Sequence record: MW349129.1
DNA: 64,000 nt
Strand: one strand, 5' to 3'
In this document: positions 50,272-59,741 of the stretch, piece by piece
Numbering within the stretch: the first letter of the stretch is position 1
Layout: the number at the start of each line of letters is the position of its first letter
Notes under the pieces: generated by a model
Told to the model about the DNA's origin: nothing
What the model saw: the letters and a program-made list of their open reading frames with translations, nothing else
Databases searched by the model: none
Position numbers and translations under genes: made by a program

Positions 50272-51453
50272 TTATTTAAAGTTTCTATAGAAATCATCAA
50301 GTCCATTAAGAACAGATTCTTCTAAGAAAACTTTAATAGTTTTATTACTTTCTTTAATTGAAGCTAATTGAGATCCTTTATCATAACTGATATTAGATTC
50401 ATCAACTCCAGCAAATCCCATATCTTCTGCAATGTATTTTACATTATCTGAATTTTCTTTAATATAAGTTAAAACTTCTCTAGGTGAAAATTCAGTAATT
50501 TTACCATTAGCAAACATATCAATTGATTCATTTACCATTTGTAAATCATTAGGATTATAGTTATTATGTCCTTCTGAAATAATATTTTGAATATAAGAAT
50601 CTTGATGAGATGGAATTACTACCCACATTAATGTTATCTGTATTAATGTAATACAGATCAGACTATGTCATTATCCTATATAAGGATAAACTATATTTAG
50701 TCGTTGAACAACTTGTATTAAGTTGATGCTAATTACTTTAATAAAAGATTTTAGCAATTAATAGTTTTATCATTCTTAAATTACTTTAAGAAGCGACAAG
50801 GTTTATTTTATCGTAACAAATTAATCTTAAAGGTTTAGTAACTTCAACTTCACCAGAAGGTGTTCTATTAATTTTACTGAAACCACGCATTGAGAAAGAT
50901 ACATCAGACTTTTGTCCAATTAATCCTTTCATATCTTTACCAGCTGATGTTTGAGCTGTTTCTACTTCTCCCATTAATTTATTACCATTCCACCAAGTTC
51001 TAGTAACAATATGAGAAATATTACGTTGATCAATATACATTTGACGTTTAGGTTCATCACTTAAAGGATGACCTGCAAATTATTATTCTTCATTACTTTA
51101 ATAAAGATTAGACTATATCATCTAGGTTATATATTTAGTCGTTGAACAACTTGTATTAAGTTGATGCTGATTGAGATAATAATCTTTCCCAGCAATTAAT
51201 ATAATTTAACGTGAGCCATTTTAACCTAAAACTCACCATAAAAAGTTCTTCTTGCTAATTTTTCTTGTATTACTGGACTATCTAAACCACTTTGAATAAC
51301 ATCTTTACGATAAACACGACCATTACGGTTTTGTCTATCCGCTTCTTGTAACTCAGCAATGAATCTAACTGATTTATTATTATCTTGAACTACTTCTGGT
51401 TGAGAAGTTGTGTTAGATTCATTAATAAGATAAGCTTTTATATCTTTAGACAT
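50272..51453 (-). CDS. Prohead core protease (T4 gp21-like), three exons: 51453-51231, 51075-50810, 50625-50272; spliced 280 aa
   Basis: N.NGRVY motif. Splicing restores FYGE-SGHP and ICYD-WVVIPSH. Exon sum is 843 nt, in frame. Confidence 0.9.
50626..50809 (-). mobile_element. ORF-less group I intron, 184 nt
   Basis: P1 CGAU|AA with UUGUCG (U-G pair); P2 with GUAA loop; P4 UGCUAA/UUAGCA; R GUUCAACGACUA; S UGACAUAGUC; terminal G. Confidence 0.9.
51076..51230 (-). mobile_element. ORF-less group I intron, 155 nt
   Basis: P1 GUGAGU/GCUCAC (U-G pair); P AAUUGCUGGGAAA; Q AAUCAGCA; R GUUCAACGACUA; S UGAUAUAGUC; terminal G. Confidence 0.9.
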
Positions 51454-56295: not shown

Positions 56296-59200
56296 ATGAT
56301 TACTAAACCAAAGTTAAAGAAAAAAGTGTATTACGATTATAAAACTAATAATATTAGTTTTTTAAGAGTAGCTAGAGACCTTAAAAAGAACAACGTTAGA
56401 AATTATGGGATTCCATTAACTCTATACGATAAAAATCTTATAGGTGTGGATCCTTGGGATCCTGAAATTTCTGATGAAATGAAAACTCGTGTATTAAGAG
56501 AAGCTAAAATTAATATATGGTTTTATCTAAGGGAAGTTATAAGAGTTCCAGTTCCTGGTGGTAAAGTTATGTATGAACTTCATAGAGGTAATATGGCTAT
56601 GACGTTTTGTATGTTACACAATTTAGATACAGCGATAATGCTTCCACGTCAGCACTATAAAACATATTCAGCTGTATGTTATTATTCATGGATAATGTTA
56701 TTAGTAGGTAGTAACTATACAATGTTATTTACTCATAAATCTTATTCAGATACAACAGAAAACTTAAAACGTCTTAAAAACTTATTTAAAGAGAAATGTT
56801 TACCTGAATATGTATTAGCTAATTTTGGAGATAAAAATGATAGAGATAAGATTAATGAATTTCAATTAGCTAGTAATAACAATACTATTAAAACAGTTTC
56901 ACCTCCGACTAACAGTGAGAGTGCGAACAAAGCCGGTAATAAAATAAAAATTCGCAAATAACTGTTTCTAACATTTATTTATAAATACTGAAATGGATGT
57001 GGAGAAATGGCTGATAACAGTTTTGCGACATTAGAAAATAGAAAAAATATATTCCTGAAGAAATTAGAAGAAATAAATGGAGAAGTATTTGAAATGGTTG
57101 GAGAATTTAAAAATACAAATGAAGAAACACTTTTTAAATGTAAGAAATGTGATAATTTGTTTCTCTCTAGCCCGTATAATATAGTAAGAAGAAAAAGAAA
57201 TGGTTGTAATATTTGTTTAAAAAAGAAAAAGAAATCTAAAACAAAACCTGAGCTAACTATTAAAAATATTAAACTAAGAAAAGAAAAATTTATTGAAAAA
57301 CTAAATGCAAAGTATAAAAATAAAGAGTTTGAATATTTAAGTGGATTTATTGATTTAAAGACACAATGTAAATTCAAATGTAATAATTGTGGTAATTCAA
57401 ATTATTGGATAACTCCTGATTATATAATTAAAAAAAGTAATATAAATTGTAATAAGTGTTCTTCACCTCATAACAAACAAGACTTAAATAGTTATATTGA
57501 GGATATTAAATCTAAATATGGTGAAAGATTTAATATTGAAATAGATAAGAATAAAAACTTTGAAAACTCTAAATCTAAAGTCCACATAAATTGTAATAAT
57601 TGTGATCATGATTTTAAAGCAACTGCAGATAGATTTAAATTAGGTGGAATTTGTCCTTATTGTAATATGACTACTTTGGAAAAAGAAGCTTATGAAATTT
57701 TATTAAAATACTTTAGCAAAGAAGAAATAGAGATTCAAAAAGGGTTTGACAATTTAGTTTTCAAAAATGCTCAAAAGTTTGATTTTTATATTGAAAAGGA
57801 AAATTTATTAATAGAAGTTGATGGTAAACAGCATATTAATGATAAATCTTTCGGTGATGAAAAAGAATCTGAAATTTCCTTTCTTAGAGATCAAAATAAA
57901 AATAAATTTGTTTTAGACAATAATTTAAAATTAATAAGAATATTATACAACCAAGGAATAGAAACTGTCTTAATGTGCTATTTTGATCACGGAATTTTGA
58001 CAAGAAATATTTTTTCTATAAATATATAAAATGCCTTTGCCGGCTATAAAATTTATTTAATTGCTGGAAATACTTTATCAAGTTAATCAGCATCACTAAT
58101 TATAGTGTTCAACGACTAAATAATAAATAGTATTATAAAATACTAAGATATAGTCTCATCTTTATAATTTTTATAAAGTTAAGATAATTGAGAGGTAGTA
58201 CTGTAAATAGTTGCAGTAGTAAAAGAATATTAATTGCTGGAAAAGATTATTATCTCAATCAGCATCAACTTAATACAAGTTGTTCAACGACTAAATATAT
58301 TCGCTTATTTATATGAGTATGATATAGTCTGATCTATATTTAATAAATATAGTTAACTTAATGACCTATGGTTTGGTTAGATGAGTGGGCTTTCATTCCA
58401 CATAATCAAACAATGTTTGAAGCAATGAGACCAGCAGTCTCTACAGCATCTGCAATAGCTAAAAAGAATGGTACACCTTACGGACTTCTAATTACAACAA
58501 CACCGAGTACCTTAGATGTTCCTCAAGGACAATACTTCTTTGAACAAATGAACGATGCAGCTCAATGGACAGAAAAAATATATGATTATTATATTAATTC
58601 TGAAGAAGAAGGTAATGAAAAATTAGAAGAATATATGGAAAGTAATTCAGGTAATTCATTCATCTATATAGAATATTCATATAAAGAATTAGGTAAAGAT
58701 GACACTTGGTTAGAAAAGCAAAAACGTCAAATTGGTTCTTTAGAAGCAGTTAAACGTGAAATTCTTCTTGAATGGGCATTTAGTAATGATGATTCATTAT
58801 TTGATGAAGAACAAATGACGGAGTTATCATTATATGCAAATAAAGAGATATATAATACTATTGATTTTAAAATAAACAACAAAACGTATTACGTGCATAT
58901 GGTTAAAAAGATGGATAATATGCATGAAAAAAATTGGTTAGTTGGTATTGATATATCTGGTGGTCTTGGTCGAGATAATACTGCATTTACTGTAGTTGAT
59001 CCGGGTACATTAGAACCAGTAATGGTTTTCCAAAATAATATAATTAACGGACCTACTTTTAGAAAATTAATTAAAGAGCTTATTACACTTTATATACCTA
59101 ACGCAGTATTAATACCTGAACGTAACTATGCTGGTACAGTGATGATAGAAGATATGATTCAAACTGATGGTATTGGAGATAATATTTTTTATTCATTAAA

Positions 59201-59741
59201 GAATAGAACAGCAGAAAAACAAGTTGAAGTGAATAAGCAAGTATTTAATGAAATTCCTAGACATAGTACTAATAAAGTTACTAAACAAGTAAGAAGATAT
59301 GGCATTGATACAACTAAAAAATCTCGTGATCTAATGCTTAATGAAATTTTATCAATGATCGTTGAAGAAAAGCCTTATCTAGTTAATAATAAACTATTAT
59401 TCCAACAAATAAAATCTCTTCAAATGAAAAAAGGTAGAATTGATCACCCTGATGGAGGACATGATGACTTACTCATGAGTTATTTATTCTGTTTATATGC
59501 ATACTATTACGAAAAAGATATTAAAAAATTTGTTAAAGTTAAATACGGTTCAATGGTATCTCCAACTGGAGAAAATGCGGAAGAAATTGAAAAAGAAAGA
59601 CAAGCTAGAAGTAAAGATATTGCATCTATAAAACGTATTGGAGGAATTATTGATGGTAATTCACCTACCAATCCTCTGTTACAGAATAATAATTCATCCC
59701 CAGATCAAAAATCAAAAAGAATAATGAACTTATTAGATTGA
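56296..59741 (+). CDS. terL: Terminase large subunit, three exons: 56296-56937, 58191-58204, 58364-59741; spliced 677 aa
   Basis: Walker A-like LPRQHYKT; splicing gives NKAG-RGSTV-PMVWLDE (Walker B); nuclease GIDISGGLGRD and HDDLLMS. Exon sum is 2034 nt, in frame. Confidence 0.92.
56970..56981 (+). promoter_or_regulatory. Late-type promoter inside the intron, driving the endonuclease
   Basis: AACATTTATTTA, 26 nt upstream of the ATG, with a GGAG RBS. Confidence 0.5.
57007..58029 (+). CDS. Intron-encoded homing endonuclease: repeated CxxC zinc ribbons plus a PD-(D/E)XK/Vsr-like nuclease domain
   Basis: Six CxxC pairs in three repeats; FDFYI...LIEVDGKQH. Confidence 0.8.
   Translation: MADNSFATLENRKNIFLKKLEEINGEVFEMVGEFKNTNEETLFKCKKCDNLFLSSPYNIVRRKRNGCNICLKKKKKSKTKPELTIKNIKLRKEKFIEKLNAKYKNKEFEYLSGFIDLKTQCKFKCNNCGNSNYWITPDYIIKKSNINCNKCSSPHNKQDLNSYIEDIKSKYGERFNIEIDKNKNFENSKSKVHINCNNCDHDFKATADRFKLGGICPYCNMTTLEKEAYEILLKYFSKEEIEIQKGFDNLVFKNAQKFDFYIEKENLLIEVDGKQHINDKSFGDEKESEISFLRDQNKNKFVLDNNLKLIRILYNQGIETVLMCYFDHGILTRNIFSINI
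58191..58204 (+). other. 14-nt micro-exon of terminase (AGAGGTAGTACTGT)
   Basis: Bounded by a terminal G and by a P1 U-G pair (UACUGU|AA with UUGCAGUA); restores the frame. Confidence 0.85.
58205..58363 (+). mobile_element. ORF-less group I intron, 159 nt
   Basis: P AAUUGCUGGAAA; Q AAUCAGCA; R GUUCAACGACUA; S UGAUAUAGUC; P3 GAAUAU/AUAUUC; terminal G at 58363. Confidence 0.9.

What the first reader, a model, noticed from the sequence alone, without database searches (positions are those of the whole stretch)
56938..58363. Tandem introns 14 nt apart create a micro-exon in the terminase ATPase
Seen: the exon AGAGGTAGTACTGT (R-G-S-T-V) is flanked by an endonuclease-bearing intron and an ORF-less intron. 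The micro-exon supplies both the P10 partner of intron 1 (AGAGGU) and the P1 partner of intron 2 (UACUGU), leaving almost no spare nucleotides. Inference: the ORF-less intron could hitchhike by co-conversion with the upstream homing endonuclease and may help destroy its target site. Splicing order may be constrained, and exon skipping would frameshift and inactivate the terminase.
Basis: partly seen in the sequence, partly recalled or inferred. Interest (0 to 1): 0.8.

Follow-up and report, generated by a model that had tools for sequence, protein, structure and literature searches.

The report
Two introns flanking a 14-base exon
The DNA-packaging (terminase) gene of Staphylococcus jumbo phage Madawaska is interrupted by two self-splicing group I introns only 14 bases apart; this is a real, extreme example of a known kind, and it resolves a gene structure the phage's describers could not reconstruct.

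Summary
The window is Staphylococcus phage Madawaska (MW349129.1). terL consists of:
- exon 1, 56296-56937
- intron 1, 56938-58190 (1253 nt, with a 340-aa homing-endonuclease gene in its P1 loop)
- a 14-nt micro-exon, 58191-58204
- intron 2, 58205-58363 (159 nt, no ORF)
- exon 3, 58364-59741

Joining the exons gives a 677-codon ORF colinear with intron-less terL of phages S6, DC4 and SA1. Both introns show group I hallmarks: U•G at the 5' splice site, a terminal G, and P3-P9 with covariation. Micro-exon bases 1-6 pair with intron 1's P10 guide and bases 9-14 with intron 2's P1 guide.

The hitchhiking idea is only partly supported. The two introns occur independently in relatives:
- Site 1 alone: AH12 and a metagenomic contig.
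- Site 2 carrying its own homologous endonuclease gene: PB50, Machias.
- Both introns ORF-less: MarsHill, LY01.

No pairing overlap forces a splicing order, and the guide sequences do not favour exon skipping.

Precedents exist: AR9 terL has five exons, one of 33 nt, and an intron at the same site 1; exon skipping is reported for Twort and SIOphi; trans homing is described for T4. I rate this a new variant of a known kind. The very small ribozymes (127-161 nt) are the most interesting by-product.

The parts
56296..56937 (+). terL exon 1 (aa 1-214, ends ...ANKAG; last base U pairs with G of the guide)
   Evidence: tblastn with intron-less S6 TerL, aa 1-214 at 97.7% identity; GenBank CDS CPT_Madawaska_069 runs on to a stop at 56959-56961 inside the intron
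56938..58190 (+). Group I intron 1 (1253 nt), at site 1 between codons G214 and R215; ends in G58190
   Evidence: Absent from S6/DC4/SA1/PALS_2 at this position; Rfam Intron_gpI 30.7 bits, E 1.6e-5 on 57961-58178; helix table
57007..58029 (+). Homing-endonuclease gene (340 aa) in the P1 loop of intron 1: treble-clef zinc fingers plus a C-terminal Vsr-like nuclease domain
   Evidence: PF14311 DUF4379 E 2.8e-9; phrog_559 E 1e-43, phrog_9084 'homing endonuclease'; AlphaFold model pLDDT 84.2; Foldseek Vsr 1cw0/1vsr prob 0.97-0.98, TM 0.50-0.54 on the target; invariant D259, E270, G273, H276, D295, K298 in 16 homologs
58033..58044 (+). Internal guide sequence of intron 1: GCCUUU (P10 partner of micro-exon bases 1-6) directly followed by GCCGGC (P1 partner of the exon 1 end)
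   Evidence: 6/6 pairs each, U•G at the splice site; covaries with the exon in MarsHill/LY01 (AUCAUG + GCUUGC) and AH12 (ACCUU + GCUCGC)
58051..58178 (+). Ribozyme core of intron 1. P3 is 58051-58057 with 58122-58128. P4 is 58062-58067 with 58087-58092. P5 and P6 are hairpins. P7 is 58113-58118 with 58151-58155. P8 is a hairpin. P9 is 58160-58167 with 58171-58178.
   Evidence: Anchor segmentation and local folds; RNAalifold recovers P4, P7 and P9 unsupervised; family model R1 120.3 bits (the model was built from this sequence among others)
58191..58204 (+). Micro-exon AGAGGTAGTACTGT, coding R215-G216-S217-T218 and the first two bases of V219; this is the conserved Arg-Gly motif just upstream of the Walker B strand
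   Evidence: Colinear with S6 AGAGGTAGTACCGT; aligns to T4 gp17 ...[13 protein letters not shown]...
58205..58363 (+). Group I intron 2 (159 nt, no ORF), at site 2 inside codon V219; ends in G58363
   Evidence: Absent from S6/DC4/SA1/PALS_2/AH12; Rfam Intron_gpI 32.1 bits, E 6e-6; 92% identical to MarsHill intron 2
58207..58218 (+). Internal guide sequence of intron 2: AUAGUU (P10 partner of the exon 3 start, 5/6) followed by GCAGUA (P1 partner of micro-exon bases 9-14, 6/6)
58224..58352 (+). Ribozyme core of intron 2. P3 is 58225-58230 with 58297-58302. P4 is 58235-58240 with 58259-58264. P5 and P6 are hairpins. P7 is 58288-58293 with 58325-58329. P8 is a hairpin. P9 is 58334-58341 with 58345-58352. 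There is no P2.
58364..59741 (+). terL exon 3 (last base of the V219 codon, then PMVWLDEW... to the stop): Walker B, TTT coupling motif and nuclease domain
   Evidence: tblastn aa 220-677 at 97.4% identity to S6; GenBank CDS CPT_Madawaska_071 starts at an internal ATG, 58368

Best explanation
SHOWN:
- terL of phage Madawaska carries two separate group I introns of one family of very small ribozymes (P1, P3-P9, no P2).
- They sit at two of at least three closely spaced insertion sites (nt 627, 642 and 656 of the intron-less gene). These sites bracket the codons of the conserved Arg-Gly motif just before the Walker B strand of the packaging ATPase.
- Intron 1 holds, in its P1 loop, an intact gene for a zinc-finger plus Vsr-like homing endonuclease. 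Intron 2 has no ORF.
- The 14-nt exon between them is held at its first six bases by intron 1's P10 guide and at its last six bases by intron 2's P1 guide.
- Only removal of both introns at these junctions restores the 677-aa terminase.

INFERRED:
- Each intron splices on its own by the ordinary two-step guanosine-initiated pathway. Either order is possible, because the two guide pairings share no base.
- Skipping of the micro-exon is disfavoured, because the guides do not match the non-cognate exons.
- The arrangement arose by independent invasions of a homing hot spot.
- Intron 2 is a vertically inherited, ORF-less relative of a site-2 intron that elsewhere still carries a homologous endonuclease gene.
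- The endonuclease-bearing site-1 intron replaced or joined a small site-1 intron in the Madawaska lineage, converting the adjacent exon bases.
- Intron copies also recombine with each other within the genome.
- If the endonuclease cuts an intron-less terL in a mixed infection, intron 2 would almost inevitably be co-converted. That is a consequence of proximity, not the reason intron 2 exists.
For: Exon junctions:
- The spliced ORF is 2034 nt and colinear with S6, DC4 and SA1.
- The same rule (U at -1, G at the intron end) gives intact 2034-nt ORFs for MarsHill, LY01 and PALS_2.

Group I identity:
- Rfam hits; R/S core pattern 3 versus 0 expected.
- P1 is 6/6 with U•G in all 12 introns tabulated.
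- Three different Watson-Crick pairs occur at the same P1 position of site 1: C-G in Madawaska, A-U in MarsHill, G-C in AH12.
- The P10 guides co-vary with the micro-exon codons (GCCUUU:AGAGGU versus AUCAUG:CGUGGU).
- P3 keeps 6-7 pairs with five different sequences; P5 (in most), P6, P8 and P9 are maintained with different sequences.
- RNAalifold finds P4, P7 and P9, with 4 compensatory pairs in P9.

Endonuclease.

Independence of the two introns:
- AH12 has site 1 only.
- PB50 and Machias have site 0 plus site 2, with a 336-aa homologous endonuclease gene in P8.
- L012 has an endonuclease-bearing site-1 intron only. L013 has site 0 plus site 1 with a 15-nt micro-exon.
- MarsHill and LY01 have both introns without any ORF.

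Gene conversion:
- Madawaska versus S6 shows 16 mismatches in nt 601-660 against about 2 per 30 nt elsewhere.
- Madawaska versus MarsHill: 31 of 59 mismatches lie in nt 601-840.
- PALS_2 has the intron-type exon flanks but no intron at these sites.

Recombination between intron copies: the P3-P7 part of intron 2 matches the prohead-protease intron of the same genome, while its guide, P8 and P9 match MarsHill intron 2.

Skipping: cross-pairings are 2/6 and 3/6.
Against: - No RNA data: splicing, its order and its products are inferred.
- Rfam scores are below the curated threshold, and nothing is reported when the whole window is searched.
- A P1 helix closed over a 1.1-kb loop and a core without P2 (and with short P5/P6) may need a protein helper. 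Some phage terL introns spliced only in vivo (PMC11878797).
- The direction of the evolutionary events (gain versus loss, which allele is ancestral) is not resolved by 12 alleles.
- The endonuclease's activity and target are untested.
- Steric interference between two ribozyme cores 14 nt apart could impose an order that base-pairing analysis cannot reveal.
Confidence: 0.82

Rival explanations
1. One reading: intron 2 persists and spreads mainly as a passenger of intron 1's endonuclease (co-conversion, or trans homing), and its insertion helps destroy that enzyme's target.
For: - The two insertion sites are 14 nt apart, far inside the co-conversion range reported for T4 (up to 2 kb; PMC2790892). 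That paper proposes exactly this for genes with one endonuclease-bearing and one ORF-less intron.
- There is an exon-divergence hot spot around the sites.
- The endonuclease looks intact.
Against: - Intron 2's orthologues in MarsHill and LY01 (90-92% identical) sit next to a 127-nt site-1 intron without any endonuclease gene.
- PB50 and Machias have a site-2 intron with its own endonuclease gene and no site-1 intron.
- L012 and L013 have the endonuclease-bearing site-1 intron without intron 2.
- So the linkage is neither necessary nor general. Intron 1 alone already splits the target.
Confidence: 0.3
2. Coupled or ordered splicing: because the micro-exon is almost fully occupied by P10 of intron 1 and P1 of intron 2, the two ribozymes interfere or cooperate. 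One must go first, and mis-splicing (skipping) acts as a brake on terminase production.
For: - Only 2 unpaired bases separate the two guide helices.
- Exon skipping by tandem group I introns is documented in Twort and in SIOphi (PMC3073962; PMC11878797).
- Skipping here would give a stop after six codons (sequence).
Against: - The two pairings share no base.
- Non-cognate pairings are weak (2/6, 3/6), unlike Twort, where the three introns are described as similar.
- The same 14-nt spacing is kept in MarsHill and LY01 with a quite different intron 1. AR9 manages with a 33-nt exon, and L013 with a 15-nt exon at another pair of sites. Close spacing therefore seems tolerated rather than special.
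Confidence: 0.2
3. The mini-introns are not autonomous ribozymes: they need a phage or host protein, or serve as a regulatory gate (GTP- or time-dependent) on TerL synthesis.
For: - The cores are very small (127-161 nt, no P2, weak P5/P6; one relative lacks P9).
- Four of eight validated Bastillevirinae introns spliced only in infected cells, and a 'molecular on-switch' idea was proposed there (PMC11878797).
Against: - All catalytic-core elements (P3-P7 pseudoknot, J6/7, J8/7, terminal G) are conserved.
- Intron-less alleles in sister phages show that the introns are dispensable for TerL regulation.
Confidence: 0.25
4. The gene is broken (a pseudogene or assembly artefact) and the 14-nt match is coincidental.
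For: GenBank annotates two separate 'terminase large subunit' CDSs, and the describers could not reconstruct the protein.
Against: - The phage is a viable isolate.
- The identical architecture, with different codons in the micro-exon, occurs in MarsHill and LY01.
- The junctions obey group I rules and restore a full-length ORF.
Confidence: 0.02

Closest known systems
Bacillus phage AR9 terL (KU878088, AR9_g121, annotated as a join of five exons)
   Same: - Same phage lineage and same gene.
- A group I intron sits at exactly the same position (…KLG | RG…).
- A short internal exon coding the RG…WL segment follows, and then another group I intron.
   Different: - The AR9 exon 2 is 33 nt, not 14.
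- Its second intron sits after W-L-N rather than inside the Val codon.
- All four AR9 introns are about 290-320 nt, and no endonuclease gene was seen in them: only a 39-aa hypothetical ORF is annotated.
Phage Twort orf142 (three group I introns, exon skipping; Landthaler & Shub 1999, cited in PMC3073962 and PMC11878797) and SIOphi/phiNIT1 genes of Bastillevirinae (PMC11878797)
   Same: - Several group I introns in one phage gene, with small internal exons.
- Terminase is a preferred host gene.
- phrog_559 / Vsr-fold endonucleases occur in terL introns.
   Different: - Exon skipping was observed there experimentally and involves similar introns.
- Here the guide sequences differ and skipping is predicted to be poor.
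- No 14-nt exon is reported in the passages read.
Trans homing of the T4 nrdB intron by MobE, and collaborative homing of ORF-less introns by a neighbouring endonuclease (PMC2790892)
   Same: An ORF-less intron lies within co-conversion distance of a functional endonuclease's site of action, which gives a route for its spread.
   Different: - Here the helper would itself be intron-encoded, 14 nt away.
- Comparative data show the passenger also exists without it.
- There are no cross data.
Small bacterial and phage group I ribozymes (Azoarcus tRNA-Ile intron, 205 nt; Twort orf142-I2, about 250 nt): own knowledge, not checked here
   Same: Compact P1, P3-P9 architecture and a conserved P7 / G-binding core.
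   Different: - The Madawaska-family introns are 127-161 nt and lack P2.
- The MarsHill/LY01 site-1 intron also lacks P9.
- Self-splicing is untested.

Membership tests
Group I intron (both inserts) | The 5' splice site follows a U that forms a U•G wobble in P1 with an internal guide sequence | tested here: met
   GCCGGU:GCCGGC and UACUGU:GCAGUA, 6/6 each with terminal U•G; compensatory changes at site 1 in MarsHill, LY01 and AH12
Group I intron (both inserts) | The intron ends in G (omega-G), and the 3' exon can pair with the guide (P10) | tested here: met
   G58190 and G58363; P10 6/6 (intron 1) and 5/6 (intron 2), directly adjacent to the P1 guide
Group I intron (both inserts) | Conserved catalytic core: P4-P6 and P3-P8 domains, P3/P7 pseudoknot, R and S elements | tested here: met
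   Segments and folds; invariant TTCAACGACTAAAT and GATATAGTCT; RNAalifold P4, P7, P9
Group I intron (both inserts) | Match to the curated Rfam model RF00028 at its gathering score | tested here: not met
   32.1 and 30.7 bits against a 50-bit cut-off. E 6e-6 and 1.6e-5 only in a 1.7-kb search; nothing in whole-window searches. The model's P2 and long P8 regions are simply absent in these mini-introns.
Group I intron (both inserts) | Guanosine-dependent self-splicing with exon ligation | not testable with these tools
   Exon ligation is inferred from colinearity with intron-less alleles
Intron-encoded homing endonuclease, Vsr-like / PD-(D/E)xK type (phrog_559) | Free-standing ORF inside the intron, with a nuclease fold and conserved catalytic residues | tested here: met
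   ORF in L1. Family and domain hits: phrog_559 1e-43; DUF559 (window protein) and DUF2726 (2 of 5 related endonucleases) weak hits. Structure: Foldseek Vsr prob 0.97-0.98 but E only 0.035-0.057. Catalytic residues: invariant D259, E270, G273, H276, D295, K298.
Intron-encoded homing endonuclease, Vsr-like / PD-(D/E)xK type (phrog_559) | Cleaves the intron-less allele near the insertion site | not testable with these tools
   No cleavage data. Candidate targets are the S6-type and PALS_2-type sequences.
Trans / collaborative homing pair | The ORF-less intron is inherited together with, and dependent on, the neighbouring endonuclease | tested here: inconclusive
   The 14-nt distance satisfies the proximity condition. 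Comparative occupancy shows no obligatory linkage. Crosses are needed.
Twintron (intron inside intron) | One intron interrupts the other, with no exon sequence between them in the mature RNA | tested here: not met
   The 14 nt between them code conserved RGST(V), present in all intron-less alleles

The most novel reading that the evidence does not exclude
The 127-161-nt introns of this phage group (intron 2 here at 159 nt; the ribozyme part of intron 1 at about 160 nt; the 127-nt P9-less site-1 intron of MarsHill/LY01) may be the smallest natural self-splicing group I ribozymes, well below the 205-nt Azoarcus intron (own knowledge). If so, two such ribozymes operate 14 nt apart on a shared micro-exon that is the P10 substrate of one and, at the same time, the P1 substrate of the other. 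That would imply either coaxially stacked guide helices or an enforced splicing order.
Probability: 0.3. Interest if true: 0.75.

Novelty: new variant of a known kind. Interest (0 to 1): 0.5.

Why it matters
**Annotation.** The finding gives the mature TerL of Madawaska, and by the same rules of MarsHill and LY01 (junctions were also mapped in Machias, PB50 and AH12). The describers of Madawaska, MarsHill and Machias stated that the mature TerL could not be reconstructed. It also shows that Rfam's threshold misses this whole family of mini-introns.

**Intron and endonuclease biology.** Three insertion sites lie within 29 nt, around the Arg-Gly / Walker B motif. Across 12 alleles they are occupied in five different combinations, giving micro-exons of 14, 15 and 29 nt. 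Homologous endonuclease genes sit in different loops (L1 versus P8) of different introns. This makes the locus a compact natural system for studying homing-site competition, co-conversion and intron-intron recombination.

**RNA biochemistry.** Ribozymes of 127-161 nt acting 14 nt apart are attractive minimal models.

Nothing here changes the general picture of phage group I introns.

Tried and rejected
**Searches that gave nothing**
- Rfam at gathering threshold and a whole-window E-value search returned nothing. Only the 1.7-kb search showed the two sub-threshold Intron_gpI hits.
- Sequence searches of the endonuclease and of a 5-sequence profile against PDB gave only spurious zinc-ribbon or NXF1 hits.
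- Scans of IMG/VR and JGI metagenome contigs for relatives of TerL exon 3 found nothing.
- A literature search for 'smallest group I intron' returned no paper, and a broader search gave nothing citable. The size comparison with Azoarcus therefore rests on my own knowledge.

It was redone with database homologs.
- My first automatic spliced aligner crashed on the micro-exon. It was replaced by anchor-based junction refinement.
- My first splice attempt was off by one base and gave a frameshift. It was corrected.
- A find request on PMC22036 failed because one search term was too short. The paper itself, Landthaler & Shub 1999, is not held, so it is cited only through later papers.

**Limit of the alignment**
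- The MAFFT alignment A1 is not structure-consistent in P3', P5, P6 and P8, so formal column-wise covariation was limited to P4, P7 and P9. The other helices were checked per sequence.

**Readings rejected**
- One large intron or a twintron: the 14 nt are coding and conserved.
- A pseudogene.
- A local guide sequence for intron 1 upstream of the ORF: read by eye, 56938-57006 (printed) holds no complement of GCCGGU.
Full report
**Source**

The window is identical to bases 1-64000 of Staphylococcus phage Madawaska (MW349129.1). Madawaska is a 265-kb AR9/PBS1-like jumbo phage. GenBank annotates the region as two 'terminase large subunit' CDSs (56296-56961 and 58368-59741) with a 'homing endonuclease' CDS between them (57007-58029). 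The describers noted that terL is intron-disrupted. [quoted passage not shown]

**Observation check**

Intact homologs now exist. Phages S6, DC4 and SA1 have an uninterrupted 2034-nt terL. Joining 56296-56937, 58191-58204 and 58364-59741 gives a 2034-nt ORF with one terminal stop. It is colinear without gaps with S6 (93.6% nt, 660/677 aa). The coordinates in the finding are exact:
- Intron 1 is 56938-58190 (1253 nt).
- The micro-exon AGAGGTAGTACTGT is 58191-58204.
- Intron 2 is 58205-58363 (159 nt).

Both introns follow a U and end in G.

**Group I identity**

Rfam's Intron_gpI model matches 58195-58352 (32.1 bits, E 6e-6) and 57961-58178 (30.7 bits, E 1.6e-5) when 1.7 kb is searched. Both scores are below the 50-bit gathering score, and nothing is reported in whole-window searches. 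Rfam alone would therefore not establish the case.

The core sequence GTTCAACGACTAAA...GATATAGTC occurs three times in the window against 0.00 expected.

I segmented 12 related introns on conserved anchors and checked every helix:
- P1 is 6/6 with a terminal U•G in all of them.
- P3 keeps 6-7 pairs with five unrelated sequences.
- P4 and P7 are invariant.
- P5 (in most), P6, P8 and P9 are kept with different sequences.

RNAalifold, run unsupervised on the MAFFT alignment, recovers P4, P7 and P9, with four compensatory pairs in P9. There is no P2. These are complete but minimal group I cores.

**The micro-exon and the guide sequences**

Intron 1's guide lies after its ORF: GCCUUU (58033-58038), immediately followed by GCCGGC (58039-58044).
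- GCCGGC pairs 6/6 with the end of exon 1 (GCCGGU).
- GCCUUU pairs 6/6 with micro-exon bases 1-6 (AGAGGU).

Intron 2's guide GCAGUA (58213-58218) pairs 6/6 with micro-exon bases 9-14 (UACUGU). The preceding AUAGUU pairs 5/6 with the start of exon 3.

These pairings are supported by covariation.
- At site 1 the third base of the Ala codon is C in Madawaska, A in MarsHill/LY01 and G in AH12. The guide has G, U and C respectively.
- MarsHill and LY01 encode RGST with different codons (CGUGGUUCU...), and their P10 guide is AUCAUG instead of GCCUUU.

**What the micro-exon encodes**

A sequence search of intact S6 TerL against solved structures aligns ...ANKAGRGSTVPMVWLDEWAFIP... with T4 gp17 ...[23 protein letters not shown].... 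The 14 nt therefore code the conserved Arg-Gly motif six residues before the Walker B strand.

From memory, and not tested here: an arginine at this spacing from the catalytic glutamate is the trans-acting arginine finger in thermophilic phage P74-26 TerL.

Insertion into the most conserved codons is typical for homing introns.

**The endonuclease**

The 340-aa ORF has treble-clef zinc fingers (PF14311, E 2.8e-9). It belongs to phrog_559 (E 1e-43) and also matches phrog_9084 'homing endonuclease'; its Machias and PALS_2 homologs additionally match phrog_7140 'intron encoded nuclease'.

An AlphaFold model built on 16 homologs (mean pLDDT 84.2) matches Vsr endonuclease (1cw0, 1vsr) in its C-terminal domain. 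Foldseek probability is 0.97-0.98 and TM is 0.50-0.54 on the target, but the E-values are only 0.035-0.057.

D259, E270, G273, H276, D295 and K298 are invariant in the family, so the gene looks intact. The same phrog / Vsr-fold family is reported in terL introns of Bastillevirinae Bacillus phages (PMC11878797).

The ORF occupies the P1 loop. Its stop codon (58027-58029) lies 3 nt before the guide sequence.

**Survey of alleles**

Twelve terL alleles were mapped. Insertion sites are numbered on the intron-less gene:
- site 0, after nt 627
- site 1, after nt 642
- site 2, after nt 656
- site 3, around nt 722-726
- site 4, after nt 798

| Allele | Occupancy at and near the hot spot |
|---|---|
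| S6, DC4, SA1 | No introns. |
| PALS_2 | Site 4 only (endonuclease-bearing). |
| AH12 | Site 1 (206 nt, no ORF) plus a further downstream intron. |
| L012 (metagenome) | Site 1 only, with a 53%-identical endonuclease gene in the P1 loop. |
| L013 (metagenome) | Site 0 plus site 1 (49% identical endonuclease), leaving a 15-nt micro-exon. |
| PB50, Machias | Site 0 (153 nt) plus site 2 (1210 nt), leaving a 29-nt micro-exon. The site-2 intron carries in P8 a 336-aa endonuclease 31% identical to Madawaska's over its full length (E 2e-32). |
| MarsHill, LY01 | Site 1 (127 nt, no ORF, no P9) plus site 2 (156-157 nt), with micro-exon CGTGGTTCTACTGT. Neither intron has an endonuclease gene. |
| Madawaska | Site 1 (endonuclease-bearing) plus site 2 (no ORF). 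|

Bacillus phage AR9, whose terL is annotated as five exons, has a group I intron at exactly site 1 (…KLG|RG…). A 33-nt exon and a further intron follow.

Close tandem introns in this stretch are therefore a recurrent feature of the lineage. The 14-nt case is the tightest spacing seen here.

**Evolutionary signals**

- Exon divergence peaks at the hot spot. Madawaska versus S6 has 16 mismatches in nt 601-660, against about 2 per 30 nt elsewhere, and almost all are synonymous.
- Madawaska and MarsHill are 97.1% identical over terL, yet 31 of their 59 differences lie in nt 601-840.
- PALS_2 lacks introns at sites 1 and 2 but carries the MarsHill-type exon bases (GGT CGTGGTTCTACTGT ACC).
- SA1 and S6 differ by 13.8% overall, but their longest identical run (125 nt, nt 592-716) lies exactly over sites 0-2.

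These are the expected footprints of repeated gene conversion around a homing site. The direction of each event is not resolved.

Intron 2 of Madawaska is 92% identical to MarsHill's intron 2. Its P3-P7 segment, however, matches an intron in the prohead-protease gene of the same genome. Intron copies therefore also recombine with each other. A family model built from the terL introns finds those two protease introns at 108.5 and 104.7 bits.

**Mechanism**

Shown: the parts, the junctions and the guide pairings.

Inferred: each intron splices by the ordinary group I pathway.
- The P10 pairing of intron 1 and the P1 pairing of intron 2 use different bases of the micro-exon, so either order is possible on paper.
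- The pairings needed for skipping are poor. Intron 1's P10 guide pairs 2/6 with exon 3, and intron 2's P1 guide pairs 3/6 with exon 1.
- Skipped RNA would read GGT ACC TAT GGT TTG GTT AGA TGA and terminate (sequence).
- Steric effects between two cores 14 nt apart cannot be assessed here.

**The hitchhiking idea**

If the endonuclease cuts an intron-less terL, co-conversion of a marker 14 nt away is expected. Wilson and Edgell proposed exactly this for genes with one endonuclease-bearing and one ORF-less intron (PMC2790892).

The survey shows, however, that intron 2 has its own history. It has an endonuclease-bearing counterpart at the same site. It has orthologues with no endonuclease gene nearby. 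And the endonuclease-bearing site-1 intron exists without it. Hitchhiking is therefore a likely consequence of the arrangement, not a demonstrated cause.

**Comparison and novelty**

Already known:
- Multi-intron phage genes, terL as a favoured host, small internal exons, exon skipping and trans homing.
- A five-exon terL with an intron at the same site, annotated in AR9.

New here:
- The resolved gene structure for Madawaska and its relatives.
- The 14-nt micro-exon almost fully engaged by two guide sequences.
- The three-site hot spot with homologous endonuclease genes in different introns and loops.
- The very small size of the ribozymes. To my knowledge they are smaller than the 205-nt Azoarcus intron, but I could not confirm this from the literature held.

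I rate it a new variant of a known kind, with interest 0.5.

Noticed in passing
window 50272-51453, minus strand (introns about 51233-51069 and 50795-50616): The prohead scaffold/protease gene (GenBank join of 3 exons) carries two more mini group I introns of the same family (R1 model, 108.5 and 104.7 bits). The P3-P7 stretch of terL intron 2 is nearly identical to the first of them, which suggests recombination between intron copies within the genome.
   Followed up: partly
L004:3116-3242 (MarsHill) and L005:2366-2492 (LY01): The site-1 intron of these phages is only 127 nt. It has P1, P3-P8 and a terminal G, but no P9 and no ORF. If it self-splices, it is a candidate for the smallest natural group I intron.
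   Followed up: partly
L015:901-1189 and 1190-1222 (Bacillus phage AR9 terL): AR9 has a group I intron at exactly the same codon boundary (G|R) as Madawaska intron 1. A 33-nt exon and three more introns follow, at about aa 225, 241 and 269. The hot spot is therefore shared between Bacillus and Staphylococcus jumbo phages.
   Followed up: partly
L007 (SA1) vs L002 (S6), terL nt 592-716: The two intron-less genes differ by 13.8% overall, but their longest identical run (125 nt) lies exactly over the three insertion sites. PALS_2 instead carries the intron-type exon bases without introns. This suggests two 'haplotypes' of the homing site that move by gene conversion, or nucleotide-level selection (for example endonuclease resistance).
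   Followed up: partly
L009:3238-3408 (PB50) and L011:2685-2855 (Machias): For the intron near aa 241, the only junction that keeps the reading frame and a terminal G puts G, not U, before the 5' splice site. MarsHill and LY01 have an intron 4 nt further downstream with a normal U. This is unexplained.
   Followed up: no
L005:3948-5892 (LY01 terL, near aa 540): A 1945-nt insertion carries a 382-aa transposase-like ORF (phrog_506, E 3.4e-94). Its junctions do not obey the U/G rule. It may be an IS element or an IStron-like insert in terL.
   Followed up: no
window 56938-56961 and 58205-58316: Translation of unspliced RNA runs 8 codons into intron 1 (stop at 56959-56961). After removal of intron 1 alone, it would run 37 codons into the core of intron 2 (stop at 58314-58316). 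The endonuclease stop codon lies 3 nt before intron 1's guide sequence. Ribosomes could therefore interfere with folding of both ribozymes.
   Followed up: no
whole window: Rfam's gathering threshold detects none of the four mini-introns in the window. A published Rfam scan of relative DC4 likewise reported no introns (PMC10638138). Annotation pipelines will systematically miss this intron family.
   Followed up: yes
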